Notes under the pieces: generated by a model
Databases searched by the model: none
The model's input: the letters and a program-made list of their open reading frames with translations, nothing else
Told to the model about the DNA's origin: nothing
From: Paramoeba atlantica
Taxonomy: Eukaryota > Protista > Discosea
Length of the DNA stretch: 64,000 nucleotides
Assembly: GCA_977017575.1 (NCBI GenBank)
Contig: CDRNVI010000053.1
Coordinates: 434,001 to 498,000 of the forward strand
Direction: 5' to 3'
Position numbers and translations under genes: made by a program
Shown: positions 47,150 to 60,947 of the stretch, piece after piece
Layout: the number at the start of each line of letters is the position of its first letter
Position numbering within the stretch: position 1 is the stretch's first letter

Positions 47150-47468
47150 GTCAAATCCCTTCTTTTGCACCGTTTGAACATTTTTAGTCAGTTTGAGTTG
47201 GTTGGAGATTTACTCCATGTATAACCAAGGATATAGCTTTACTCTATTTGCACAAAACGTGCCTATAGAAAGCCTGTTGTGGGATATTCTGCATTGTTGA
47301 TTTTCTTAAAATGGCGTTTATTATACGCTATACTATAACGTATAATTTTGTAAGATTATGGAGACGTTCCCATAACTGGGCGTCAAGAGGCAAAAGTAAG
47401 GGAATGGGGCTGTTCTACTTTACAGTGTGCGTAAGCATTATTTTCCTTTGCTACAATTCCTTATCACC

Positions 47469-50400
47469 ATGAATGCCCCTTTCAACAACGCAGCTCTTGA
47501 GCGCATGGAACACGACTGGATCAATGCAAACAAAAGAAAATATTGTCCTGATCATACGAGCAAAGTACATTCTACTGCACGCGATGCACTTCCAGTCGAA
47601 TATCTACGGAAGCTTGTGCGCGACAACTGTGATTTGACGGGGAAGAAAAACCGGGAAGAACGTGCGCTTCATGTTTCTGCGCTGCGTTATCTACCCCAGG
47701 CGATCATGAAACTCTGGGAAAATATTCCAATGCCTTGGGAAACTGTACGCGAAGCTACCGTCGCTTTTCATACCACAGGAGCTCTTACGATTATTACAGA
47801 AACTCCAAAAGTTTTAAGTTCTGTATTTAAAGCGCAATGGGGCGCCATGTGGACCAGGATGAGGAAGGAAAAAAGCATTCGAGTCCACTTTCTGCGTGCA
47901 CAAGTCACGCCTGTCTTTGATGATGAAGAGCCTCCCGTAGACTATGGAGACGTCGTGCTCGACCTTCCTGAACAGGATTCGGTTCCATTTGATCTCGATG
48001 AGACTGAAAACGAGAAAGCTATGGAATTGCTGCTTGCAACTACGAACCTTTCAGGGAACGAGGGGGTTATTATACCAATCCAAACGCAGCTTACTTTCTT
48101 TCGACAATGTCGTATACTCGCTGGTGAGGTGGGAGACTCAAATTATTTTTACCTGTTTGCTACAGATACGTTTCTTACCGGGAAAGCACTCGGAGTGGCA
48201 ATTCCTGGAGCTCCTCGATTTCAGCCTCTGTATCACGATGCGCATGACGAAGAGGAATGGACAGAGTTTAATGACCTCAATAAAGCCGTTATTCGTCAGC
48301 CTCTTCGAACCGAACACCAGCTTGCTTTTCCACATTTGTACAACTCTCGTCCTCGGAATGTTTCGATCTCTTCATATCACTTTCCGCTCATGATGTACCT
48401 ACGATGTGTCGACCCTGAACTCGATGCTTTTTCGTACGATCCTTGCGTATGTCCAGTACCATACTCAAAAACAATTCATGATTGCGATCGGGATGGTGGT
48501 TTTCATGAAATTAATAACATGCCTCTCGACTTCATGCCATTTTTTTCGAACCTTCCATTGTGTACCACCTCTACGGCACCCGCTGTAGAATTATTTTGGA
48601 CAAATCTCACTTCCCGACGTGAATTTCCCCTTTGTCGAACCGAGATACAATTGGTAAACTCATGGAGCAAAGAACGTAGTTTAGATTCATTGCCTGCCAA
48701 GGTTCGAATTTCCTACCAGAAGATTTTAAAGCAACATACGCACAATTCAATGGTTAAGAGGAAGAAGGATTTTGGTATATGTGAAAAGCAGGACAATCCT
48801 CATCAGGTTTCCCTCCGTTCGTCGAAACAGAGCTTAGGCGATTTTCTCCTTGAATCAAGAAATTTTATTAGTTCGAGAGTTGACTGGTTAGAAGCTGGAC
48901 TGCAATTGTGTCGTCAAGCGCATAACATGCTGACACTACTTCTTCAGCGACGAAATATGGATTTCCTTCATTTGGACTACAATTTCCATCTCAAACCAGT
49001 AAAAGCACTTACTACAAGGCAACGCAAACGTAGTCGGTTGGGACCTGCATTTCACCTTCCCCGCGAAATTATGGGGCTTACAAAATCAATGTTGGATTTA
49101 CACGTCAAACATCGATTAGGCGAGCTCGATGCTTTCCAGCTTGCGGATGCATTGCAATACCTTTTTACTCACGTGGGAAAACTAACTGGATTATACCGAT
49201 ATAAGTATCGAATTATGCGCCAGATAAAGTGGGCTAAAGATATCAAGCACATTCTTTATTATCGTTTCAACACCGGTCCGGTAGGCAAAGGGCCTGGTAT
49301 GGGTTTCTGGGTTCCAGTTTGGCAAATGTGGCTTTCTTTTTTTCGTGGAATAGTACCAGTTGTGCAGAGATACATTTCGAACATGTTATCACGTGAATTC
49401 GAAGGAAGAAACGTCAAGGGAAACGCTAAAAAGGTAACTAAGCAAAGATCTGAAGCTAATTACGATCGCGAGCTCCGCCAAACTATAACTCAGGAAGTGG
49501 CCGATATGATACCACCTGGAATGAGGGAAAAGAAAATCAAACTTGTGTTGCAGCATTTCAGCGAAGCCTGGCGACGAAGAAAAAGCAATCAGCCTTGGAG
49601 AGTTCTCGGTCTTTCTCCAAATATTGAAGCACTCATATTGCGTTTCGTAAAACGAAAGGAGGAGTGGTGGGCAATGTCAGCACAACAGAACCGCATGAGA
49701 GTTATTTCCGGTCAAGCTGTTGATAAAGCATCAGTCAGAAAAAATCACGGACGCTTGGTGCGCCTACAACTGAAGACTGAGCAGGAACGTCAAAAAGATT
49801 GGATTTCGAACGGACCATATCTCTCCACAAATGACTTTACGGGAATATACACACTCATGGCAAAGTGGTTGGCCAGCCAGAAATTTCAACCAATACCCTT
49901 TCCTCCAGTAAATTATAAGCATGACATGAAAATATTACGGCTCGCTCTTGACAAGCTTAAAGAAAATCACGGAGCTCCTGGTTCTCGTACGACGTCAACA
50001 GCCAAGACAGAACAGCTTAAAATCGAAGAAGCTTTCAATAATCCCCAATCAACGATCAATGGTATCAAAAAGAGGTTGATGCAAATGCGCTCCTTTAAGG
50101 ATATGACAATTGAATATGTGGACTTCTTTACTCATATGCTTCCCGTATATGACATTGAACCAGACGAAAAAATTATGGATGCATACCTTACGCAATATTT
50201 GTTTTATGAATCAAGCCGTAGGGGTCTCTTTCCGAGTTGGATTAAGCCAAGCGATGATCTTCCTAACCCAGCCCGTCTATACAATTGGTGTCAATCAATT
50301 AACAATGTTCCGGGGGTATGGGAGACCTCTCGAGGAGAAAGCACTATTTATGTTGAGACTAAAATTGAACATTTATCTGACAAGGTTGAACACACTTTGT

Positions 50401-53400
50401 TAAATCAAATGCTTCGCCTAGTCATGGATACTCATCTGGCGGATTATATGACGGCCCGCAACAACGCATCTTTAACTTACAAAGACATGAATCATACCCA
50501 AAACTATGGTATTATTCGCGGTTTACAATTCGCTCCTTTTTTAATCCAATTTTGGGGTCTTGCCATTGATCTTACGATCCTTGGCCTCGCACGAGCTGCA
50601 GAGCTGTGTGATGGGCGTGATAGTCCATCTCACGCTATGAATTCCCGTACAGCATCCGATTTTCAGGCCCATCACATAAAAATGTATCTGAGGTATTTGG
50701 ATAAGGTTCATATACTTTATCGCTTTTCTCAACGGCATGCTTCTGATCTGATTGCCAAATTTCGACCCAAGTTGTCAGGAACTTCCGATTTGGGTAGAGA
50801 GATAAACTCTTATAAAATACATCAACATTGGCCCAAAGATATGCGTATGCGTCTGCTTAGTCACGATGTATGCCTTGGTCGTTCGACATTCGATTTTGTG
50901 AAAAAACGAATTCCGGTTTCTCTTGCATCTATCACATTGGAAAACACGTATATTTCGGTCTACTCTCGGGACAACCCCCAGCTTCAATTCTCTATGAATG
51001 GCTTCGAGGTATGCATTCGCCCTCGTGCGCGCATGCTTGACCCAGCGATCGTTCCTGAGGATCAAAATATTTGGTCCCTAATAGATCATATCTCAAAGGC
51101 TGCCACCGCGTTTGCGTATCTCCGAGTAGCGGAAGAAGAAGTAAAGCAGTTGGAAATTCGTCTTCGTTTAGTGCTACTAAACAGTGGACAAACTCCGTTT
51201 AAGAAACTGGTTGAAAAATGGAATACACAGCTAGCCGCTTTTGTTGCCTACTATCGAGAAGCAATTTATGGTACTCCAAGCGTCCTTCCGGTTTTACTAA
51301 AAGGGGAAACCAGAATACAAAATAGAATTAAAGTGCAACTTAACTCAAAGATGGCAAAACGTTTTCCCCCTGTTGTGTTCTATGCCCCCACGGATTTGTG
51401 GGGATTGGGTATGTTATCCGTTGGTCATTCCTTAATTCCACAAACCGACCTTAGGTATGGGAAGCAAAGTTTATCTGATACTACTCACTTTCTATCTGGG
51501 TTATCTCACGATGTAGGAGTGGAAATTCCGAACGTTTTGAGATACATAACACCGTGGCAAGAGGAGATGAACGAATCTGCGCGAGTGTGGAGAGAGTATC
51601 GCCTTAAAAGCGAAGACGCAACGCGGAATAATAGAAGGATTGTTTTGGAAGACATAAACGAAATGAGAGGACTTGGTGTCCCAAGAATTGCAACTGCATT
51701 TCAGGCTGATAAGCAAACGCTTCTGTATGATGTCGGGTGGCGCGTTCGACAGGAGTTTAAGGTTCACAACGTACAGCGACCACAACCTTTTTGGTACATG
51801 AATGTAAGACATGATGGCAAACTTTTCAATTTTGATAAATACAAGGCTGACGTCGTACAAACCTTTGGAGGGATTGAATCCATACTTTCTCATTCTATAT
51901 TTGGGGCGACAGGATACGAGGCCTGGGAAGGACTCGACTGGAACCGCATAAGCAAGTTTGAAGAAAACATGAAAGGAAAAAAGATTTCGCATGCACAGCG
52001 CGGGGGTTTAAGCAAGATTCCCAATCAACGTTTCGCGTTATGGTGGTCACCCACCCTGAATCGATCTTCGGTGTATATGGGGTTTTTAACGCAGATCGAC
52101 TTGACCGGAATCATGATGCACGCTAAATTACCGTTAGTCAAGGCGTCCTTGGTTCAGATTTTTCAAAATCATCTTTGGCAAAAAATTCATGAAGGGATTG
52201 TTGTCGATATATGCAAAGTCTTGGAAACAAGACTTAGCAAGCTTGGTATTCAATCGTTACAAAAGTGTCACACTGCTCCCCGAAAGAGCTTTCGAATGTC
52301 CAGTGGAAGTGCGGACATTACAATGTTGGCGACAGGGCGCTGGTCTCTCTCAAGGCCTTCTCTTCTCTCCGAGTCAGGGGATAAATTTTCGTTCACATCC
52401 GCAAAAAACTATTGGATCGATGTTCAAATTCGTTGGGGAGATTACGATTCCCATGATGCTGAGAAATACGCCCGTTCGAAATTTCTATCTTACACAACTA
52501 ACCGTGGAGAACAAATGTATCCTTGCCCAACAGGGGTAATGGTCGTCTTTGATTTAGCATATAACGTACATTCAGCTTATGGTTACTGGATACCTGGTCT
52601 GAAATCATTTCTTGAAGATGCGCTACAAAAGATACAGCTGTACAACACGGAACTTTATAGACTCCGAAGTAATCTTAATGCCAAACTACAACTTGCACCA
52701 CGAGAAAAGTCTGAGCCACCATTGTCCATACAGAATTGTGATGATTTGTTTTCTGGAAAAGCAGCTTGGATTGTCGATGGTTCATGTGCACATCTTGCTA
52801 TTCCTCAAAGGACTTTCGAAGGAAATCTCACTACGAAAGCCATCAACGGAGCAGTTCTTGTTATAAATCCGAAGAGTGGACAACTCTTTCTGCTTGTTGT
52901 ACATGCTGATACCTGGAAAGGACAACGTCGTTTGAGTAATTTGGCCAAGTTGAAAGTCGCAGAAAGCGTTGCCGCCCTCGTTCGTTCACTTCCAAAAGAT
53001 GAATATCCCAAGAGCATCATCAGCATGCAGAGGCATAGTTTAGAGGTCCTAAATGGAACTCTTTCTGGTCTTACAAATACTGTAATTAAAGGTTCAAATT
53101 TACTTGTTCCCTTCAGAGCTTTACTAAAGGTTCCGAAGATACATGAAATTGTTTCTACGGCTGCTAAGTCGCAGTCCCATATAATTGGCTTGTACGATGA
53201 TTGGCTTGATACTATTAGTCCATTAACCGCCTTCTTTCGCCTCCTCATTCTCCTTCGTGCTTTGAATGTGAACGAGAGTCGATGTCGCACTATTCTCCGT
53301 TCCGTAGCAAGATCCAACCCCTCTTCTCACCACATGTGGCCGAAACTGGAGGCTGGCGAGTGGCTACATGTTGAAACTTCTTTAAAAGATCTCATTGTTG

Positions 53401-54452
53401 CAGATTATTGCAAACGAAACGCAGTAGATGTATCTCGTATAACACCCACAGAGATTCGTGATATTTTGCTTGGGCAAGAAATTGCATCGCTCTCAGTTCA
53501 ACAAGCTCGAAGTGAACTTATTGATCGAGCAAAACAGACCATACAAACGGACGCTATTAGAAAGTCGGGAAAAATAAAAGAATCACGAAAGGGTAACACA
53601 AAGTCATTCGTACCTCGTAGCCATCATAGTAAAACGGAATGGAGACAACGTGCTCTTGCTACGCGTGCCAGGCCTGAAGTAAGTGAAGTTGACACGCTTT
53701 CTCCGAAGCATGTGCAGTCACGTGAAAGCGTAATTTTGCCTAGCAACATTCTTTATATGGTTTCACGTTGTTCAGACGTGTACAATAAAGTGGTCGTTCT
53801 GCTTTATGGTAGGAAACTTGAAGCGCAGTGCCAAGTAATATGCGCAGTTTTTCCCGCTCAAATTGGTACACATGAAAATGTTACGTTCTCCTACCGACAG
53901 TCTGAACACCCATTGCTCAATTCCTTAACACTTATTGGCGTCCTCACAACTTGTTTCGAACTTGAATATAAACCAACGAACTCAGATTTGATAATGATGA
54001 CTAACGTAGCGAAAGATAATTATTCGGATGCTCATGACTTGTTTTACATAACTGTGTTTCTACACGGAGGCAAGGCAACTTTGGCAACATATCGCACTTC
54101 CTCCAGTGGGAACGAAGTAATCAAAAATTTGTCAGGCAACCCAAATGAAGATTCCTCTACTACTGAGCTATTAGAAAATGCTTTCGCACAGTGTGAAATA
54201 CAGCTTGGACAAGAATCATCCGGCTTTTATTTGGTTCCAGAAGACGGAATATGGAATTATAGCTTTCTGGGCGTTTCACCACCGCAGTATCCGAGCACTC
54301 TTATAGTAGATGCACCCCATGATTATCATAATCCATATCACAGAAAAGAGCACTTTATTCGATCAAACGTTGAAACGACAACTTATTCTTCTCCTGTTCA
54401 AGAAGTTGATTCCCATTTTATTGCAGATCTTGGAGATGATATGGCATGGTAG
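47469..54452 (+). CDS. PRP8: Pre-mRNA splicing factor Prp8 (divergent, intronless)
   Basis: GKLTGLYRYKY, RFNTGPVGKGPG, RFPPVVFYAP, LWWSPTLNR, HLWQKIHE, TFEGNLTTK, LYDDWL and a C-terminal Jab1/MPN-like region. ATG at 47469. Confidence 0.97.
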   Translation: MNAPFNNAALERMEHDWINANKRKYCPDHTSKVHSTARDALPVEYLRKLVRDNCDLTGKKNREERALHVSALRYLPQAIMKLWENIPMPWETVREATVAFHTTGALTIITETPKVLSSVFKAQWGAMWTRMRKEKSIRVHFLRAQVTPVFDDEEPPVDYGDVVLDLPEQDSVPFDLDETENEKAMELLLATTNLSGNEGVIIPIQTQLTFFRQCRILAGEVGDSNYFYLFATDTFLTGKALGVAIPGAPRFQPLYHDAHDEEEWTEFNDLNKAVIRQPLRTEHQLAFPHLYNSRPRNVSISSYHFPLMMYLRCVDPELDAFSYDPCVCPVPYSKTIHDCDRDGGFHEINNMPLDFMPFFSNLPLCTTSTAPAVELFWTNLTSRREFPLCRTEIQLVNSWSKERSLDSLPAKVRISYQKILKQHTHNSMVKRKKDFGICEKQDNPHQVSLRSSKQSLGDFLLESRNFISSRVDWLEAGLQLCRQAHNMLTLLLQRRNMDFLHLDYNFHLKPVKALTTRQRKRSRLGPAFHLPREIMGLTKSMLDLHVKHRLGELDAFQLADALQYLFTHVGKLTGLYRYKYRIMRQIKWAKDIKHILYYRFNTGPVGKGPGMGFWVPVWQMWLSFFRGIVPVVQRYISNMLSREFEGRNVKGNAKKVTKQRSEANYDRELRQTITQEVADMIPPGMREKKIKLVLQHFSEAWRRRKSNQPWRVLGLSPNIEALILRFVKRKEEWWAMSAQQNRMRVISGQAVDKASVRKNHGRLVRLQLKTEQERQKDWISNGPYLSTNDFTGIYTLMAKWLASQKFQPIPFPPVNYKHDMKILRLALDKLKENHGAPGSRTTSTAKTEQLKIEEAFNNPQSTINGIKKRLMQMRSFKDMTIEYVDFFTHMLPVYDIEPDEKIMDAYLTQYLFYESSRRGLFPSWIKPSDDLPNPARLYNWCQSINNVPGVWETSRGESTIYVETKIEHLSDKVEHTLLNQMLRLVMDTHLADYMTARNNASLTYKDMNHTQNYGIIRGLQFAPFLIQFWGLAIDLTILGLARAAELCDGRDSPSHAMNSRTASDFQAHHIKMYLRYLDKVHILYRFSQRHASDLIAKFRPKLSGTSDLGREINSYKIHQHWPKDMRMRLLSHDVCLGRSTFDFVKKRIPVSLASITLENTYISVYSRDNPQLQFSMNGFEVCIRPRARMLDPAIVPEDQNIWSLIDHISKAATAFAYLRVAEEEVKQLEIRLRLVLLNSGQTPFKKLVEKWNTQLAAFVAYYREAIYGTPSVLPVLLKGETRIQNRIKVQLNSKMAKRFPPVVFYAPTDLWGLGMLSVGHSLIPQTDLRYGKQSLSDTTHFLSGLSHDVGVEIPNVLRYITPWQEEMNESARVWREYRLKSEDATRNNRRIVLEDINEMRGLGVPRIATAFQADKQTLLYDVGWRVRQEFKVHNVQRPQPFWYMNVRHDGKLFNFDKYKADVVQTFGGIESILSHSIFGATGYEAWEGLDWNRISKFEENMKGKKISHAQRGGLSKIPNQRFALWWSPTLNRSSVYMGFLTQIDLTGIMMHAKLPLVKASLVQIFQNHLWQKIHEGIVVDICKVLETRLSKLGIQSLQKCHTAPRKSFRMSSGSADITMLATGRWSLSRPSLLSESGDKFSFTSAKNYWIDVQIRWGDYDSHDAEKYARSKFLSYTTNRGEQMYPCPTGVMVVFDLAYNVHSAYGYWIPGLKSFLEDALQKIQLYNTELYRLRSNLNAKLQLAPREKSEPPLSIQNCDDLFSGKAAWIVDGSCAHLAIPQRTFEGNLTTKAINGAVLVINPKSGQLFLLVVHADTWKGQRRLSNLAKLKVAESVAALVRSLPKDEYPKSIISMQRHSLEVLNGTLSGLTNTVIKGSNLLVPFRALLKVPKIHEIVSTAAKSQSHIIGLYDDWLDTISPLTAFFRLLILLRALNVNESRCRTILRSVARSNPSSHHMWPKLEAGEWLHVETSLKDLIVADYCKRNAVDVSRITPTEIRDILLGQEIASLSVQQARSELIDRAKQTIQTDAIRKSGKIKESRKGNTKSFVPRSHHSKTEWRQRALATRARPEVSEVDTLSPKHVQSRESVILPSNILYMVSRCSDVYNKVVVLLYGRKLEAQCQVICAVFPAQIGTHENVTFSYRQSEHPLLNSLTLIGVLTTCFELEYKPTNSDLIMMTNVAKDNYSDAHDLFYITVFLHGGKATLATYRTSSSGNEVIKNLSGNPNEDSSTTELLENAFAQCEIQLGQESSGFYLVPEDGIWNYSFLGVSPPQYPSTLIVDAPHDYHNPYHRKEHFIRSNVETTTYSSPVQEVDSHFIADLGDDMAW

Positions 54453-55036
54453 CATGTTCTGATTCCGGAAAAAGTGTATCATAGGTGTCTGCATTACACC
54501 GTGGTATTGTTTTCCGCTGCGTGTAGAGCACGTACGTTTTATGAGCAAAGTGGGGATATGCACCCTCACAAAATTTTGAACAATTCGATTATTTATACTG
54601 GTATCCCTTCTTGTGATATAGAATCTCACAAGAAGATATAAATGGGATTTCCATGTTGCAGACAATTTTTATTACGGCTTTATTATTTTTGTAAACAGCG
54701 CAGTATATTTTGATGCGATTCTGTATATCAATTAAACGCTTTGATTGTGTGAACTGAGTGGGCAACTCGTACGTATCGTAGGAATTTCATTTTACACACT
54801 TCCATATAGTAGTTGAACTATTATACAGGAACCAAGTTCCTGTGTCACGAAATAGTATTCCTGGAATGAAGAGGTCATGTACACCTCTATTATGGCATAG
54901 TAACTACCTCATGCAAAGCGCTTCATTGTTTCTTCTAGTGTTCTAGTTTTGTGGTTCTTTTAACAATATGATGTTAATATTGTACTATCAAGTAATTTGT
55001 GTGTACGATTTTGTTTCTCACAAATTCTCCTTATTT

Positions 55037-57208
55037 ATGACTTCATCTGACGCAGGTATTTACGATGAATCAAGTGAGATCGCCTCTTTGCCTGCGAGAT
55101 TTATCATTAAGTCCAAGAGAAGAGGACAATCCATATCTTGCAAGCGTCACGTTTTAGTCAAGCCTGAAGGGGGCGGACCTTTACATGCGCTTTTACGTGG
55201 CGCAAGGAAGGGGGAAACACTCCAGATAGATACTTTACCGGAATGCTTCTTACAGGAATCTTCGTCACCCGATTGTTCCAATGAAGGTGTGGATGCAGAA
55301 AATAAAGCATTCGAAGTGGAAGTCTGCGATAGGTTTACGCAGTATGACGTAAGTGCAGGTAATAGCGATTTTTTCGTTAAAGAAATATTATCGTCCAGCA
55401 AAGACGTTGATTTATTTACCCCAGATTTTGAAAGTAAGGTAGCCGTGGACATTAATGAGGTGATAGATCTCGATTCCTTTTTTCAGCAATTAAGCGAGCA
55501 CGAAAACAATTTTCAAGAAGTGGAGATTGGAGATGGACGACTTTCACGGCACTTTGAAGACGCAATTTGCTCAATGAAATCAAACGAAGTGGCTTTATTT
55601 ATGTTTCCTTCTTTGCTTTCCGATGCAAAAGAAAATTCGCAACCTCCATCCGAAAAATACTACCGCTTTGAGCTTCGTTCTCATTCAAGAGTGTGTGCCT
55701 TACATTTAGATGATGCAGAAAATATTAGGCACGCTGAGCAAAGAAAAATTGAAGGCAATACTTTATTGAAGAAAGATAATTTGCCTTTGGCTGAGAAAAA
55801 ATATCTCCGAGGCCTTGAATTTGTCGCTCAAATAGGCAAAAAAGGTTTAAATTTCTTGTTGAAGAAACTTTCTACCACAATATCTTTGTATAATAATCTT
55901 TCTTTGGTCTACCTGCGTCAACATAATTGGCACAAAGTAGTCGATGCCAGTTCAAAATCAATAGCTCTAAATTCCAAACCGAACGAAAACACCAAGGCAT
56001 ACCTCCGAAGAGGGGTCGCATACCGTTTTCTTATAGAATTCACCAACTCTAGACGGGACTTCGAAATGATTCTTTCATGTGATCCGAATGACACCGAGGC
56101 ATTGCATCAAATGAAGACTTTACAGGAAACGTTGCACAATCATGAGACGTATGAGAAGCGTGTATATCGAAAAGCCTTTGCGAAAGGCTTTGATTACGAC
56201 GATGTACGCTATCAAGGATATGTCTGCTCTTGGAGTAGATCAAAGGGTTGTGGAAGAATTCGTCACGTTGAGACTAAAAACGAGTATTTTGTACATTTTA
56301 CTGATGTACGTACCTGCCGTGATCCCGCTCAGCTCTATGTCGGCGAGCGGCTGGAATTTCAACCAATAAAAACAGAAGAAAGACTGAGAGCAGGAGATGT
56401 CACGTTGCCTGGTGGTATTCGAATTCCGAAAGTAGAGGAATTTTCCAAAGAGATGGATCCGCAGAAACAAGTGGAACAGAGCATCAAGAAAGCCCTTTGG
56501 GAAGCTGAGCTCGAAAAGAATACTTCAGAATTTGGCCTGGGGTCGGTTTCCTCCGAATCAAATAGACACTTTACATATGGAACATGCAAAGAGTGGAACC
56601 TAGATCGAGGATTTGGTGTTATCACTAATGATAAAATTGAATCTACAGAGTATTTCGTTCATTGTAGAGATATTTTGAGTTGTCTAAAACCTCGTAAGGC
56701 TTTATTTGTTGGCGAAAAGGTGCGTTTTGAAGTAGACGAAACGGAAATTGGACGACGCCGAAAACGTGCCATTCGGGTTACTTCGCCTAATGGGCAAGAA
56801 TGTAGCGGTATCGAATGTCTTTCACAAGAAGAGCAAGAAAGATCGATTCAAGGAGGACGAAAACTCCAGAAGCCTTCTCGATCGAATGAAGAAACAGGTC
56901 TACTACAGCGAAGACATACGGGAAAGTGTATAAAATGGATTTACGAACGGGGCTTCGGTTTCGTAGAGTCGTACGACACTGAAGTGGAGTATTTTGTGCA
57001 CGCAACTTGCTTGGAAAAATGCAATGGAAAAATCAAAGCTTTGCGCATAGACGAAGAAGTTGAATTTGATGTAGAAACAAAAAATGGAAGACAGCGCGCC
57101 ACAGCCGTAACCGCCATTGGGGGATCTCCTGTTTCAGGATTACAAGAAATTCCAGATGCAGATGCTCCTATGGAAGCTAAAATTGTTCAAAATGAAAGTA
57201 TTGAGTGA
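55037..57208 (+). CDS. FKBP-like/TPR co-chaperone fused to three cold-shock domains
   Basis: FEDAICSMKSNEVALF (degenerate FKBP); TPR RKIEGN/YNNLS/KAYLRRG; three CSDs with RNP1/RNP2-like motifs (KGCGRI..YFVHF, RGFGVI..YFVHC, RGFGFV..YFVHA). Confidence 0.85.
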   Translation: MTSSDAGIYDESSEIASLPARFIIKSKRRGQSISCKRHVLVKPEGGGPLHALLRGARKGETLQIDTLPECFLQESSSPDCSNEGVDAENKAFEVEVCDRFTQYDVSAGNSDFFVKEILSSSKDVDLFTPDFESKVAVDINEVIDLDSFFQQLSEHENNFQEVEIGDGRLSRHFEDAICSMKSNEVALFMFPSLLSDAKENSQPPSEKYYRFELRSHSRVCALHLDDAENIRHAEQRKIEGNTLLKKDNLPLAEKKYLRGLEFVAQIGKKGLNFLLKKLSTTISLYNNLSLVYLRQHNWHKVVDASSKSIALNSKPNENTKAYLRRGVAYRFLIEFTNSRRDFEMILSCDPNDTEALHQMKTLQETLHNHETYEKRVYRKAFAKGFDYDDVRYQGYVCSWSRSKGCGRIRHVETKNEYFVHFTDVRTCRDPAQLYVGERLEFQPIKTEERLRAGDVTLPGGIRIPKVEEFSKEMDPQKQVEQSIKKALWEAELEKNTSEFGLGSVSSESNRHFTYGTCKEWNLDRGFGVITNDKIESTEYFVHCRDILSCLKPRKALFVGEKVRFEVDETEIGRRRKRAIRVTSPNGQECSGIECLSQEEQERSIQGGRKLQKPSRSNEETGLLQRRHTGKCIKWIYERGFGFVESYDTEVEYFVHATCLEKCNGKIKALRIDEEVEFDVETKNGRQRATAVTAIGGSPVSGLQEIPDADAPMEAKIVQNESIE

Positions 57209-57544
57209 AAGTCTACTTTTAATCTTTTTATTCTGTACTTTCTTAGATATCTTTTTTCAACACGTACAATACTATAACTCTTCTTCTGCAATGCGTGTAT
57301 TATAGTTCTATCTATTCTTGTTTGTAGTTTCGTTTTCTCCTAATATTTGTTTTCTGCTACGTGAATTTCTTTTCAAAAATACGACACACGTATCATGCAG
57401 TGTGCAGCTCAGACGTTATCTCTCCTTTTGCTCTTAGCAATCACTGGAAATTAATGTATCCATAACTCCAGTAAGATACAGTAAGCATAAAATACGAATT
57501 TGTACAAATAATACATATCCCTCCTTTTCTGTTTTTGAACTGTC

Positions 57545-58801
57545 ATGCCCGAATTTGACAGTAGCACAGACGATTATGATGAAAACATAAACTACGGCGA
57601 TGCGAAGGATGAGACTATTCCTAAAATTGGAGTTCAGATGGACTTAGCACAAAGTGAGGGACATGTTCAAAAGACATTACTTGAAATTGGTGAAGGCAAG
57701 GCAATTGGATCTTCACGCGCCGTAGTTCGACTCCTGTACAGTGCACAAGATGCAGATTCATGCTGTGAGTCAGAGTTTGAAGGTTTTTCCGACTACAATA
57801 AACCACTCTCGGTTGAGTTGTGGAAGGACGAGGAGTCAGATTTTCCTAGGGGTTTTACCATGGCCCTTCGAAGCATGAAGAAGAAGGAAAAGGCCGCGTT
57901 TCTTGTATCCCCGAAATACGCTTATGGGGACAAAGGTTACAAATCTCTCCCCTCTGGTCACAGAGTTAAATATGAGATTGAAATTGTTTCATGGGCTCCG
58001 ATTGAAGACGTCAGTAAGGAGCGCGACAACTCAGTTATTAAGCAACAAATCGAAGAAGGCGATACTACCTCCTACTATACTCCGGAATATGAAACTCTAG
58101 TCACGGTAGATATTCTTGGGCATAAAGGCAAAGACAAAGTAATGGATAAACAAAACATTTCAATTCAAATCGGTAATGAAGAATTGTCGGACAATTTAGA
58201 ACGAGCTATTTCTCGCATGAAGAAAGGAGAAAGATCTGAAGTAACGATCAGCGACGTGACAGGCCCTGTAGAAGTATATGAAATCAAGCTGCACAACTTT
58301 AAACGAGTTGATCCATGGGCGGCGAAAGGACCAGAAAAAACAGAGGAGGCAAGACAGCGCAAAGACGATGGCAATAAACTTTGGAGGGAAAACAAACTTG
58401 TGAGAGCAGCACAGAAATATAAACGAGGGCTTGAGTTTCTCACCAGTGAATATGGGTTAAACGATGCAGAACTTTCTGCATTCAAAGATCTCAAGGTTCA
58501 GCTGCACAATAATTACGCACTGGTTTGTGAGAAACAATATCTGTGGAAAGAAGTTGTCGAACACTGTACGGGTTCATTGCAACAATGTAATGATGCGCAG
58601 ATTAACACCAAAGCTTATTTAAGACGAGGTGTTGCGAATCGTCACCTTGGGAATTTTTGCGATGCACATCGCGATCTTGAGAAAATCCGTGGTTCAAAAA
58701 GCGCGGCGAGCAATGTCAACGCAGAGCTTCAGATCCTGAATGCGCTGGAAAAGGCACAATACGAAAAAGAAAAAGTTCTCTACGGAAGAATGTTTATGTA
58801 G
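57545..58801 (+). CDS. FKBP-type peptidyl-prolyl isomerase with TPR domain (FKBP52/ROF1-like)
   Basis: MKKKEKAAFLVSPKYAYG, LERAISRMKKGE, RKDDGN, KAYLRRG and terminal EKVLYGRMF. Confidence 0.88.
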   Translation: MPEFDSSTDDYDENINYGDAKDETIPKIGVQMDLAQSEGHVQKTLLEIGEGKAIGSSRAVVRLLYSAQDADSCCESEFEGFSDYNKPLSVELWKDEESDFPRGFTMALRSMKKKEKAAFLVSPKYAYGDKGYKSLPSGHRVKYEIEIVSWAPIEDVSKERDNSVIKQQIEEGDTTSYYTPEYETLVTVDILGHKGKDKVMDKQNISIQIGNEELSDNLERAISRMKKGERSEVTISDVTGPVEVYEIKLHNFKRVDPWAAKGPEKTEEARQRKDDGNKLWRENKLVRAAQKYKRGLEFLTSEYGLNDAELSAFKDLKVQLHNNYALVCEKQYLWKEVVEHCTGSLQQCNDAQINTKAYLRRGVANRHLGNFCDAHRDLEKIRGSKSAASNVNAELQILNALEKAQYEKEKVLYGRMFM

Positions 58802-59354
58802 GTTTTGTCCGTAAATACTGCAAAATCATATTCCACTACAATGTGACTGCAAAGATACTACATTGTAAGGATAGAGCTGATTATTTGCATTCTGTTGCGA
58901 GTTTTTTTCTAGGTTCTAAACGGTCGTCAAATTCTACAAGATTTGGCCAGAGCATATCAACGCATTAAAGGTATTATTCGATCTAAATGCTTCTAAGCAT
59001 TTATTTGTTTCATTGTTCAGTTCAATGTCCAGGGTGATATGAGATAAAAAATCTTACGCTGTATATGCATGCAGGTACAAATGCATCATGTATAAATGTA
59101 TTTATAAGCTTGTGTGACGCATACAAATAATACAGTAGGAAGTAGTCCATGTACGTTTGTCCATATAGTACATGGATGTATATGGATAAATGCGAGCATG
59201 TTATACTCGAAATTCTGGCCATGTGTATGACCGCAATGGTGTACTTCTAACATGTGTTCTAACATGCACCCTTCTAGCACGTGTTCTATATACATCCTAC
59301 ATCTGCATTAATGTACTTATGTATGCGTGTACCTACGCGGTCCAATAGTGTTGC

Positions 59355-60947
59355 ATGAACTTCATACTACTTTGTTGTAACGCTTTTGCGTACGTCGAAA
59401 TACACTGCGTACACAGCCATGATTCGGTACTGCGACCAAGATGTTTTCCTCTAGCGTATAATCAAACGGATGAGTCGTGCGTTCCATGCTCATCGAATGA
59501 CAGTTGTGTAAGATATTTTCTTATGTGTGAAGCAGGGAGGTGTGTTCCTACGATACCAATGGCGCAATATGTGAGCAGTTCGTGGATGATTCTGATGCTC
59601 TTGCTTTTTTTGCTTTGCATAAGTTCTGAAATTCATAAATTTCCTTTGGAATATACCTCACTAGCATGCTTCTTATTTGTTGGTTATCCACTTTGTAATG
59701 CTGTCTCATTGATGTTGTGTCTTCTTTTGGGACGAGCTTCTTACGTACTTATCAATTTATGGAGAATCAACAGACAGTGTCTCCAAGATACAAAGCCCAT
59801 TCTTTCTTGGGATGTTGCCTTGCTTTTTTTACCAAGTCTTCTTTCATCGACTGCACTTGGTTGGTATCTTTCCCATGTATTGCCACATGGCATTCATTAT
59901 AGCTTCGTTGCTTTGGCCTCCCTCATTGTCAGCTGGAACCATTTGAAATCTGATTCGCGTCAAAGTATTAGTGATTACAATGCTACTACGTGCCATTACT
60001 CCGTCTACACGAATTATTCGCTGGAAGATGGAATCTCTAATAGTAGAAATAGTAATCAAACCACAGATACACAGGCAAGTGATGCAGAGCTAAGAACTCA
60101 CTGTAATAACGAATTATCGCATACGATACGCTTTTCACCCACCGCGGCACGAGCACCGAGTACGTGCATTTCACATCGCAAACATTTTTATAATAATTCA
60201 TCGGCGGAAGGAGAGAATCGGGGATTTCTTTTGGATGAAGGGATTCACCAAGAAATTCCTTGTTGTGAAAAGCATGACACACGGAGTCAAATTCCGTGTA
60301 TATGGGTGACTATGGGAGTTTACGGCGTCATATGCAGTGGATTCTTCTTTTTGACACTTTATCTTTCCCGCAAAGCACACTTGGTGACATGCGGGAGCTC
60401 AAAATACTGGAGCTTGACGTATTTGGGCTGGAATACATTGACAGTAATTTCTTTTCTTCTAGGAATGTGGTACTATCGAACTAGGCCGGCGAATTCGGGC
60501 TTGGTGTGGAATAGAAGCGCATGTTTCTACTATCCCACATTAGCTTCGTGTGTGGGAACCAACGTAATCTGTTTGGGCGTAGATCCCGGACGAATTGTTG
60601 ATCCCCTTCTTAGTGCAATGGGTTTTATGTTTGCCCCCAAAGGTACAGTTACCCTGTGCACTATCACTATTTTGAGTTTGAATCTCTGCTTCTTCATATT
60701 TAACGATGGTGCATCACCTACTCTAGCTATTTCCATTGTTCTCATTGGTTTTTGTGGGACTTGGTTACACAGAAAGCTTCCCCCAACAGCTTTTGTTGAA
60801 AGCATACAGCTTACTGTAACGCGAAAGTTAGGTTACATTTCTGTTATTGCCTCTTGCTTGTGGATCAGTCTAATGGGTATTTCTTTTGCAATTGAAGAGT
60901 GGCGTAAGAATTTTCTTTTTCAACTCCTACCTCTATGTGGACCTTAA
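59355..60947 (+). CDS. TauE/SafE-like (TSUP) membrane transporter with a small Cys-rich N-terminal domain
   Basis: PILSWDVALLFLPSLL resembles the eukaryotic TauE PLIDYDLALL motif; about 9-10 TMs in two blocks around a hydrophilic loop. Confidence 0.55.
   Translation: MNFILLCCNAFAYVEIHCVHSHDSVLRPRCFPLAYNQTDESCVPCSSNDSCVRYFLMCEAGRCVPTIPMAQYVSSSWMILMLLLFLLCISSEIHKFPLEYTSLACFLFVGYPLCNAVSLMLCLLLGRASYVLINLWRINRQCLQDTKPILSWDVALLFLPSLLSSTALGWYLSHVLPHGIHYSFVALASLIVSWNHLKSDSRQSISDYNATTCHYSVYTNYSLEDGISNSRNSNQTTDTQASDAELRTHCNNELSHTIRFSPTAARAPSTCISHRKHFYNNSSAEGENRGFLLDEGIHQEIPCCEKHDTRSQIPCIWVTMGVYGVICSGFFFLTLYLSRKAHLVTCGSSKYWSLTYLGWNTLTVISFLLGMWYYRTRPANSGLVWNRSACFYYPTLASCVGTNVICLGVDPGRIVDPLLSAMGFMFAPKGTVTLCTITILSLNLCFFIFNDGASPTLAISIVLIGFCGTWLHRKLPPTAFVESIQLTVTRKLGYISVIASCLWISLMGISFAIEEWRKNFLFQLLPLCGP

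What the first reader, a model, noticed from the sequence alone, without database searches (positions are those of the whole stretch)
55037..58801. Hsp90-type immunophilin fused to three cold-shock RNA-binding domains, beside its unfused paralogue
Seen: degenerate FKBP, then a TPR keeping carboxylate-clamp-type residues (RKIEGN, YNN, KAYLRR), then EKRVYRKAF, which is where the neighbouring paralogue ends (EKVLYGRMF). Three CSDs follow, each closing with T-x-x-x-G (TLPGG, TSPNG, TAIGG), as in Y-box/Lin28 CSDs. Established: FKBP-TPR proteins dock on Hsp90/Hsp70 EEVD tails, and CSDs bind single-stranded RNA. Inference: duplication then fusion created an adaptor tethering the chaperone machinery to RNA or RNPs (translation control, RNP assembly or stress response). 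I do not know this architecture from characterised proteins.
Basis: partly seen in the sequence, partly recalled or inferred. Interest (0 to 1): 0.7.

Follow-up and report, generated by a model that had tools for sequence, protein, structure and literature searches.

The report
Chaperone-docking protein fused to RNA-binding domains
A trypanosome relative has one expressed gene joining an Hsp90-helper-type docking module to three RNA-binding cold-shock domains; its few close kin share the layout, which suggests, without proving, a tether between protein-folding machines and RNA.

Summary
Window 55037-57208 (+) is one 723-aa gene with these parts:
- a decayed FKBP domain;
- an FK2-like domain;
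- a three-repeat TPR domain that keeps all Hsp90/Hsp70-tail clamp residues (K237, N241, N286/N287, K320, R324);
- the FKBP51/52-type seventh helix;
- three Y-box-type cold-shock domains, starting 8 residues after that helix.

A transcript contig carries the spliced leader joined at 55007, 30 nt before the ATG, and runs through the TPR/CSD junction. No Met codon lies between residues 359 and 473, so the CSD part cannot be a separate gene.

The neighbour (57545-58801) is the only other FKBP-TPR gene in this genome and is unfused. The two proteins are 29% identical, so the duplication is old.

The layout is rare but not unique. Among 1.84 billion representative proteins only three others share it:
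- two from Perkinsela-type kinetoplastids, one public as KNH06288.1 and named only a PPIase D-like protein;
- one metagenomic form that apparently has a single CSD.

I found no paper describing it. A complex model puts the organism's own Hsp90 tail (…MQEVD) in the clamp (score 0.65, best control 0.00). That shows likeness, not binding.

A chaperone-to-RNA adaptor role is plausible but untested. The first stage of the scan also noted this layout on another piece of the genome, probably the near-identical contig C15 copy.

The parts
55007..55036 (+). 5' UTR. The spliced leader is joined at 55007, 30 nt upstream of the ATG.
   Evidence: The 4313-nt contig of run X3 begins with 20 nt of SL tail (ACAGTTTCTGTACCTTGTTG) and then matches the window from 55007. 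A 23-nt string ending in this SL tail occurs about 700 times in the genome. The two bases before the junction are AC, not AG, in both haplotypes. This is unexplained.
55037..57208 (+). Coding sequence of the fused protein (723 aa plus stop).
   Evidence: The second haplotype on contig C15 is 99.6% identical and keeps the frame open. Collinear orthologues are P0151, P0004 and P0005.
55094..55309 (+). Remnant of the first FKBP (FK1) domain, residues about 20-91, shortened and without a PPIase signature.
   Evidence: There is no FKBP_C hit. It aligns with the neighbour's FK1 only with large deletions. The AF2 model gives low to medium pLDDT with some strands. Foldseek aligns 391 columns to full-length FKBP52 chain 8ffv_D.
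55310..55687 (+). FK2-like (non-catalytic FKBP-fold) domain, residues 92-217.
   Evidence: FKBP_N_2 at E 0.021. phmmer matches FKBP52 from residue 161. It aligns with the neighbour's FK2. pLDDT is 80-97.
55712..56188 (+). Three-repeat TPR domain with the two-carboxylate clamp (K237, N241, N286/N287, K320, R324/R325), followed by a long seventh helix (353-384) that carries the E-x-x-x-Y motif.
   Evidence: HMMER alignment to FKBP51. The clamp residues are invariant in alignment A1. pLDDT is 93-98. Foldseek hits include the FKBP52-MEEVD and FKBP38-MEEVD complexes. The predicted contacts with the Hsp90 tail use exactly these residues.
56210..56416 (+). CSD1 (residues 392-460). RNP2 is kept (YFVH). 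RNP1 is degenerate (KGCGRI).
   Evidence: Pfam CSD. Taken alone it scores 25.4 bits, just under the 27-bit cut-off. pLDDT is about 90. The motif is canonical in Perkinsela and in P0005.
56459..56530 (+). Helical linker between CSD1 and CSD2 (residues 475-498).
   Evidence: AF2 secondary structure. A helix-forming linker sits at the same place in the Perkinsela orthologues.
56570..56794 (+). CSD2 (residues 512-586). RNP1 reads RGFGVI and RNP2 reads YFVH.
   Evidence: 35.4 bits.. It is degenerate in the Perkinsela orthologues.
56915..57136 (+). CSD3 (residues 627-700), fully canonical Y-box type: W634, RGFGFV, YFVH, VTAIGGSPVSG.
   Evidence: 43 bits. Aligned to YBX2 and YB-1 at E 1.6e-8. Foldseek to the YBX2 CSD gives TM 0.83. 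It is canonical in all orthologues.
57545..58801 (+). Unfused paralogue: FK1 (FKBP_C) + FK2 + TPR immunophilin, 418 aa, ending where the fusion's CSD array begins.
   Evidence: It is the only other FKBP-TPR gene in the genome.

Best explanation
Window 55037-57208 is a single expressed gene of a Perkinsela-related (prokinetoplastid-type) kinetoplastid.

The gene encodes a non-catalytic, FKBP52-like TPR co-chaperone module whose seventh helix runs directly into three Y-box-type cold-shock domains.

The most likely mechanism has three steps:
- The TPR clamp docks on the C-terminal xEVD tail of cytosolic Hsp90 (here …MQEVD) and perhaps of Hsp70 (…VEEVD).
- CSD3 and CSD2, which keep their binding motifs, hold single-stranded RNA.
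- The protein thereby bridges the chaperone machinery and mRNPs or other RNPs.

The gene arose from the lineage's FKBP-TPR immunophilin by an old duplication and the gain of CSDs, before this organism and Perkinsela diverged. The unfused copy next door remains the ordinary immunophilin.

Shown here: the gene structure, the domain identities, the retention of motifs, the conservation in relatives, and the presence of the xEVD tails.

Inferred: both binding activities and the bridging role.
For: One gene
- The ORF is continuous and only about 8 residues separate helix 7 from CSD1.
- There is no Met between residues 359 and 473.
- The SL-capped transcript contig runs from 55007 through the junction.
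- The second haplotype keeps the frame.
- Three collinear relatives exist.

Co-chaperone module
- phmmer to FKBP51/52 gives E 2e-10.
- Foldseek to FKBP52 and FKBP51, including their Hsp90 complexes, gives E 6e-19.
- Clamp residues N241, N286, N287, K320, R324 and R325 are invariant across six sequences. K237 is K or R.
- The genome's own Hsp90 ends in …RMQEVD and its Hsp70 ends in …KVEEVD.
- The complex model scored 0.65 against a best control of 0.00. That mark was reached by 51 of 78 solved complexes and 2 of 108 mismatched pairs. The runs agreed in at least 52% of contacts and the partner pLDDT was at least 48.
- The contacts are K237, N241, N286, N287, K320 and R324 with Hsp90 residues 697-705.

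RNA module
- Pfam CSD scores E 8e-26.
- CSD3 aligns with the YBX2/YB-1 CSD through the GG-x-PV-x-G tail.
- Every species keeps at least two CSDs with W, RNP1 and RNP2 motifs.
- The AF2 model gives pLDDT of about 90 or more for all three CSDs.

Loss of catalysis
- None of the three-CSD proteins gives an FKBP_C hit.
Against: - No binding of any kind has been measured.
- FKBP-TPR complexes with MEEVD are solved, so the complex model may score high from memory. It shows likeness, not binding.
- CSD1 here and CSD2 in Perkinsela have lost RNP motifs. Some CSDs may therefore serve protein contacts instead.
- CSDs also bind single-stranded DNA.
- The Hsp90 tail is MQEVD, not MEEVD.
- The two haplotypes differ by 7 non-synonymous and 4 synonymous changes in this gene, which does not indicate strong constraint, though the numbers are small.
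- The transcript evidence is one assembled contig. That contig also runs on across the next gene, so it cannot exclude minor internal processing.
Confidence: 0.55

Rival explanations
1. It is an RNA-binding protein whose FKBP-like/TPR half is only a protein-protein scaffold unrelated to Hsp90 or Hsp70. The TPR might bind another acidic C-terminus, or the cytoskeleton as proposed for Leishmania FKBP52. It might also simply stabilise or dimerise the CSD array.
For: - FK1 has decayed and the branch of the fused clade is very long: 2.0 changes per site against a median of 0.9. This suggests a changed function.
- Trypanosomatid FKBP-TPR and Cyp40 proteins have been linked to the flagellum and cytoskeleton (PMC9538636, read).
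Against: - All five clamp positions and the helix-7 tyrosine are kept in lineages only 25-30% identical overall. This is hard to explain unless an xEVD-type ligand is still bound.
- The predicted docking uses exactly those residues.
Confidence: 0.2
2. The CSD array binds single-stranded DNA rather than RNA, for example at transcription, replication or chromosome-end structures. It would then bring Hsp90 to chromatin.
For: - Y-box CSDs bind both ssDNA and RNA (established knowledge).
- Earlier notes of this scan report unusual strand-skewed islands and a purine-only telomere repeat in this genome. I did not test those notes.
Against: - No nuclear-localisation signal or DNA-specific feature was seen.
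- The closest CSD in the same genome is an RBP16-like protein, whose trypanosome counterpart binds RNA (the RBP16 function is from my own knowledge).
Confidence: 0.1
3. The fusion is a gene-model artefact. Two adjacent genes, a TPR protein and a CSD protein, would be read as one ORF and expressed as separate trans-spliced mRNAs.
For: - Kinetoplastid genes are tightly packed and co-directional.
- Contigs cannot exclude rare internal SL sites.
Against: - There is no stop codon, no intergenic spacer and no Met codon between residues 359 and 473.
- CSD1 begins 8 residues after helix 7.
- The same collinear ORF is found in two Perkinsela-type genomes and one metagenome scaffold.
- The SL-capped contig runs through the junction.
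Confidence: 0.03

Closest known systems
FKBP51/FKBP52 (FKBP5/FKBP4) large immunophilins, Hsp90 co-chaperones. The kinetoplastid counterpart is the T. brucei FKBP-like protein Tb927.10.16100 (PMC9538636).
   Same: The order FK1-FK2-TPR-helix 7 is the same. The two-carboxylate clamp residues and the helix-7 tyrosine are kept. These are the best sequence and fold matches.
   Different: FK1 is truncated and has no FKBP_C signature. The C-terminal tail after helix 7 is replaced by about 330 residues holding three CSDs. Identity is only about 17-25%.
Perkinsela sp. CCAP 1560/4 KNH06288.1, 'peptidyl-prolyl cis-trans isomerase D-like protein' (P0151/P0003), and its relative P0004 from an ENA assembly.
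   Same: They are true collinear orthologues with a decayed FKBP, a TPR with the clamp, and three CSDs. They are 29-31% identical to the window's protein over about 500 residues, E 6e-45 and 2e-41.
   Different: In these proteins CSD2, not CSD1, is the degenerate domain. There is no FKBP-TPR paralogue next door; the local gene order is CorA-eRF1-fusion-DER1. The public name does not mention the CSDs, and I found no paper on the protein.
Y-box proteins (YB-1, YBX2) and kinetoplastid RBP16-type CSD proteins.
   Same: CSD3 aligns with the YBX2/YB-1 CSD including the GG-x-PV-x-G tail. The genome's own RBP16-like CSD is 35-46% identical to the three CSDs.
   Different: Y-box and RBP16 proteins have one CSD plus a basic or RGG tail. 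This protein has three CSDs, no RGG tail, and a co-chaperone module in front.
Unr/CSDE1, a multi-CSD RNA-binding protein.
   Same: Several CSDs sit on one chain. Foldseek hits Unr CSD789 and CSD456 (E 3e-8 and 5e-8).
   Different: The TM-scores are low (0.11-0.28), so the resemblance is domain by domain only. Unr has no TPR or FKBP part. No orthology is implied.
Other immunophilins coupled to RNA biology: the cyclophilin-RRM proteins PPIE/Cyp33 and PPIL4, and FKBP6/Shutdown in piRNA loading with Hsp90. These are named from my own knowledge and were not tested here.
   Same: The concept is the same: a prolyl-isomerase-family or co-chaperone module joined, physically or functionally, to RNA-binding or RNP assembly.
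   Different: The domain types and lineages differ. None of them combines an FKBP-TPR module with CSDs.

Membership tests
FKBP51/52-type FKBP-TPR immunophilin (Hsp90 co-chaperone) | N-terminal catalytic FKBP (FK1) domain recognised as Pfam FKBP_C | tested here: not met
   The fused protein gives no FKBP_C hit, only FKBP_N_2 at E 0.021. The neighbour meets the feature (E 1.3e-16). The Perkinsela orthologues also lack it.
FKBP51/52-type FKBP-TPR immunophilin (Hsp90 co-chaperone) | Second, non-catalytic FKBP-fold (FK2) domain followed by a three-repeat TPR domain | tested here: met
   phmmer to FKBP52 matches residues 161-383 with chain residues 189-417. Foldseek to full-length FKBP52 and FKBP51 gives E 6e-19 over 391 columns. 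pLDDT is 80-98.
FKBP51/52-type FKBP-TPR immunophilin (Hsp90 co-chaperone) | Two-carboxylate clamp residues (K, N, N, K, R) in TPR helices | tested here: met
   K237, N241, N287 (with N286), K320 and R324 align with the FKBP51 K…, N, K, R positions. They are invariant in A1, with K or R at position 237.
FKBP51/52-type FKBP-TPR immunophilin (Hsp90 co-chaperone) | Helix-7 extension with a conserved acidic-x-x-x-Tyr motif after the TPR | tested here: met
   YEKRVYRKAF aligns with FKBP51 RDRRIYANMF. The model has a long helix at 353-384. The role of the motif in Hsp90 binding is from my own knowledge.
FKBP51/52-type FKBP-TPR immunophilin (Hsp90 co-chaperone) | Binds the C-terminal MEEVD-type tail of Hsp90 | tested here: inconclusive
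   This was tested in silico only. Score 0.65 against a best control of 0.00; the mark was reached by 51 of 78 solved complexes and 2 of 108 mismatched pairs; contacts agreed in at least 52% between runs; partner pLDDT was at least 48. Similar complexes are solved, so the pass may reflect memory. The tails exist: Hsp90 …MQEVD and Hsp70 …VEEVD.
Cold-shock domain (PF00313), Y-box type | Match to the Pfam CSD model above the curated cut-off | tested here: met
   The whole protein scores 90.1 bits against a 27-bit cut-off, with 3 stretches. Taken singly, CSD3 scores 43 bits, CSD2 35.4 bits and CSD1 25.4 bits, the last just below the cut-off.
Cold-shock domain (PF00313), Y-box type | Nucleic-acid-binding aromatic motifs RNP1 (G-[FY]-G-F-[IV]) and RNP2 (F-V-H), plus the strand-1 Trp | tested here: met
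   CSD3 has W634, RGFGFV and YFVH. CSD2 has W520, RGFGVI and YFVH. CSD1 is only partly compliant: W399, KGCGRI (RNP1 lost) and YFVH.
Cold-shock domain (PF00313), Y-box type | Binds single-stranded RNA or DNA | not testable with these tools
   This needs EMSA, fluorescence anisotropy or CLIP.
Unr/CSDE1 multi-CSD proteins | Five or more canonical CSDs interleaved with non-canonical CSDs, with orthology to Unr | tested here: not met
   There are only three CSDs. Foldseek TM-scores to Unr fragments are 0.11-0.28. The best sequence relatives of the CSD part are Y-box and RBP16-type domains.

The most novel reading that the evidence does not exclude
Prokinetoplastid-type kinetoplastids have a dedicated adaptor of their own. 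It is a catalytically dead FKBP52-like co-chaperone whose helix 7 continues into a CSD array. It physically couples Hsp90 or Hsp70 to specific mRNAs or RNPs. In organisms that control genes almost wholly after transcription, this would link chaperone state directly to mRNA fate or RNP assembly.
Probability: 0.4. Interest if true: 0.65.

Novelty: new variant of a known kind. Interest (0 to 1): 0.45.

Why it matters
Hsp90 and Hsp70 are known to help assemble RNPs, but usually through multi-protein adaptors. A single chain that carries both an xEVD-tail clamp and RNA-binding domains would be the simplest such tether known. It would give a direct handle on how chaperones meet RNA.

Kinetoplastids regulate genes almost entirely at the RNA level, so a lineage-specific chaperone-RNA link could bear on stress responses. 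In Perkinsela it could bear on life inside an amoeba host.

The claim is cheap to test with recombinant domains. The find also corrects a public annotation: KNH06288.1 is named only as a PPIase D-like protein.

Tried and rejected
- Word-index protein searches with the fused protein, the neighbour and P0005 found essentially only the queries themselves. This reflects low sensitivity, not absence of relatives.
- A scan of JGI metagenome contigs with the four-protein alignment found only separate TPR or CSD genes and no further fusion.
- The ESM Atlas feature search returned only ordinary FKBP-TPR clusters and no TPR+CSD cluster.
- Rfam found nothing in 54000-60000.
- The repeat search found no DNA-level repeats between the CSDs or between the two genes, so neither duplication is recent.
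- The contigs carrying unfused P0007 and P0152 have no CSD gene beside them and share no synteny with the window.
- Four literature searches found no description of a TPR or FKBP plus CSD protein.
- I tested whether all CSD-bearing forms make one clade on the FKBP-TPR tree. That was marginally rejected (p-AU 0.026). The group was named after I had seen the tree and long branches are involved, so I draw no firm conclusion.
- I considered a mitochondrial role because of the likeness to RBP16 CSDs. The N-terminus is acidic and does not look like a presequence. I ran no predictor.
- The two-genes reading is rejected, as set out under the rival explanations.


Full report
**What is in the sequence**

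The long + strand ORF 54968-57208, read from the ATG at 55037, gives a 723-aa protein.

- Pfam finds three cold-shock domains (PF00313, E 8.2e-26). It finds only weak traces of FKBP_N_2 and TPR.
- phmmer against all PDB chains is clearer. Residues 161/200-390 align with the FK2 and TPR domains of FKBP52 and FKBP51 (E 2e-10). Residues 631-706 align with the CSD of YBX2 and YB-1.
- The AlphaFold2 model was built on a 40-sequence alignment and has mean pLDDT 80. It places these elements:
  - a poorly defined stretch at 20-91;
  - an FKBP-fold domain at 92-217;
  - seven TPR helices at 226-384 (pLDDT 93-98);
  - CSD1 at 392-457, a helix at 475-498, CSD2 at 512-582 and CSD3 at 627-693.
- Foldseek puts full-length FKBP52 and FKBP51, including their Hsp90 complexes, on top (E 6e-19, 391 aligned columns). 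Unr CSD fragments and the YBX2 CSD follow.

**It is one gene, and it is expressed**

- Only about 8 residues separate the end of TPR helix 7 from the first strand of CSD1.
- No Met codon lies between residues 359 and 473, so CSD1 has no start codon of its own.
- I laid public runs on 54400-59400. Run X3 has a 4313-nt contig whose first 20 letters are ACAGTTTCTGTACCTTGTTG, and which then follows the window from 55007 to 59301.
- That string is the 3' end of a kinetoplastid-type spliced leader. A 23-nt string ending in it occurs about 700 times in this genome.
- A second contig shows the same leader joined after the AG at 59276-59277, in front of the next gene. The SL junction proves an RNA origin.
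- An older run, X1 (2015, possibly RNA), covers only coding parts of both genes.
- A contig cannot exclude minor internal processing, and this one also runs on over the neighbouring gene. The transcript evidence is supportive, not final.
- Oddity: the two bases before 55007 are AC, not AG, in both haplotypes.

**Second copy in the genome**

The genome (45.7 Mb, 248 contigs) holds a second copy on contig C15. It is 99.6% identical over 5.1 kb including the flanks, so it is most likely the other haplotype. The frame stays open. The 11 differences in the gene are 7 non-synonymous, mostly conservative, and 4 synonymous. An earlier first-stage note, s1-370494, flagged the same architecture on another piece of this genome. 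That piece is probably this C15 copy.

**The neighbour**

- 57545-58801 encodes a 418-aa FK1 (FKBP_C, E 1.3e-16) + FK2 + TPR protein. It aligns end to end with FKBP52 (E 6e-23).
- It is 29% identical to the fused protein over 300 residues (E 7e-27). It ends exactly where the fusion continues into CSD1.
- A six-frame search of the whole genome finds only these two FKBP-TPR genes per haplotype.
- The low identity and the lack of any DNA-level repeat show that the duplication is old.
- The neighbour's FK1 differs from wheat FKBP73 FK1 at several pocket positions. Its own PPIase activity is therefore not assured either.

**Relatives elsewhere**

An exhaustive HMMER search of 1.84 billion representative proteins gave 1290 hits at E ≤ 0.001. 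Apart from the window's own protein, only three match the TPR and CSD parts in one collinear stretch.

- P0003 (cluster mate P0151) is Perkinsela sp. CCAP 1560/4 KNH06288.1, named 'peptidyl-prolyl cis-trans isomerase D-like protein'.
- P0004 lies on a 1.35-Mb ENA contig that is syntenic with the Perkinsela locus: CorA, eRF1, the fusion, DER1, then TTL. There is no FKBP neighbour.
- P0005 is a complete-looking 442-aa ORF on a 1395-nt metagenome scaffold, with FKBP-TPR and one CSD. Its stop lies in a G-run 29 nt from the scaffold end, so 'one CSD only' is not secure.

Further points:

- Pfam confirms CSD plus TPR in these proteins, and none of the three-CSD forms gives an FKBP_C hit.
- The closest unfused hits are from the prokinetoplastids Papus and Apiculatamorpha, followed by diplonemids and a euglenid.
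- Together with the SL sequence, this agrees with earlier notes of the scan that the organism is a Perkinsela relative.
- Trypanosomatids are reported to have one FKBP-TPR gene and Bodo saltans two (PMC9538636). No fused form from them appeared.
- The metagenome scan and the Atlas search added nothing.

The architecture is therefore rare and lineage-restricted. It is inherited and already public, though unremarked.

**History of the gene**

- On an FKBP-TPR tree, the window's two genes, the Perkinsela fusions, Papus, Apiculatamorpha, P0005 and P0007 form one well-supported clade (97/98).
- Inside that clade the three-CSD proteins group together on long branches (91/79). P0005 sits with the unfused P0007 (100/98).
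- Forcing all CSD-bearing forms together costs 15 log-likelihood units (p-AU 0.026). I named that group after seeing the tree, so the result is weak.
- CSD1, CSD2 and CSD3 each align with their counterparts in Perkinsela. The triplication therefore predates that split.
- The genome's own RBP16-like CSD is as close to them (35-46%) as they are to one another. It is a plausible source family, nothing more.
- Whether fusion followed duplication, or an unfused copy arose by loss, stays open.

**How it probably works**

- The five clamp positions (K237, N241, N287 with N286, K320, R324) and the tyrosine of helix 7 are kept in proteins that are otherwise only 25-30% identical.
- The organism's cytosolic Hsp90 is a tandem array of at least 28 copies and ends in …RMQEVD. 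Its Hsp70 array ends in …KVEEVD.
- A complex prediction paired TPR 218-392 with the last 45 residues of Hsp90. It scored 0.65 against a best control of 0.00.
  - That mark was reached by 51 of 78 solved complexes and by 2 of 108 mismatched pairs.
  - The runs agreed in at least 52% of contacts, and the partner pLDDT was at least 48.
  - The confident contacts are the clamp residues with Hsp90 697-705.
  - Similar complexes are solved, so this shows likeness, not binding.
- On the RNA side, CSD3 is canonical in every species. CSD2 is near-canonical here and decayed in Perkinsela. CSD1 is decayed here (KGCGRI) and canonical in Perkinsela and in P0005. Each species thus keeps at least two CSDs that look competent.
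- FK1 has lost its signature, so catalysis is unlikely.
- My best reading is a non-catalytic co-chaperone that bridges Hsp90 or Hsp70 and single-stranded RNA. I give the functional part about even odds. I give the gene structure and its conservation more than 0.95.

**Verdict**

This is a new variant of a known kind, an FKBP-TPR immunophilin with a CSD array, and it was not described in any paper I could search. Interest is moderate.

Noticed in passing
window 55005-55007: The spliced leader of the fused gene is joined right after an AC dinucleotide, not AG, in both haplotypes. The nearest upstream AG is at 54991-54992. The next gene's junction, after the AG at 59276-59277, is canonical. The evidence is one contig only.
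   Followed up: partly
G000 C12, C48, C88, C90 (e.g. L018:961-3075): Cytosolic Hsp90 sits in tandem arrays of at least 28 near-identical copies. Its tail reads …EGEGRMQEVD, with Q where most eukaryotes have E. The cytosolic Hsp70 array on C46 and C71 ends in …GPKVEEVD.
   Followed up: partly
G000 C37:7040-8094 and C39:21327-22384 (L005, L007): A tandem pair of RBP16-like proteins (134 and 133 aa) has a presequence-like N-terminus, one CSD and an RGG-rich tail. Their CSD is 35-46% identical to the fusion's CSDs.
   Followed up: partly
G000 C223:5570-5758 (L004): A 69-aa bacterial-type cold-shock protein ORF scores 85.6 bits to PF00313. It may come from a bacterial contig in the assembly or from a transferred gene.
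   Followed up: no
G000 C144, C177, C181, C182: Hsp70-like matches here have in-frame TGA or TAA codons. They could be pseudogenes, introns, or DNA of another organism or another genetic code within the assembly.
   Followed up: no
L032 (ENA metagenome scaffold, 1395 nt), 38-1366: This FKBP-TPR gene has a single CSD. Its stop lies inside a G-run 29 nt before the scaffold end. The other frames stay open and read RGG-like, so a sequencing slip could be hiding a longer tail.
   Followed up: partly
window 57545-57990 (neighbour's FK1): The unfused paralogue's FK1 differs from wheat FKBP73 FK1 at pocket positions: FDSSRD becomes FEGFSD, and VIKGW becomes FPRGF. Its PPIase or drug-binding activity may be weak.
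   Followed up: partly
window 47427-54452: The upstream gene is an intron-less 2341-aa ORF that I take for PRP8 from its size and sequence, without running a search on it. The X3 contig over its 3' end stops at 54864, about 410 nt after the stop codon. That is a likely poly(A) region.
   Followed up: no
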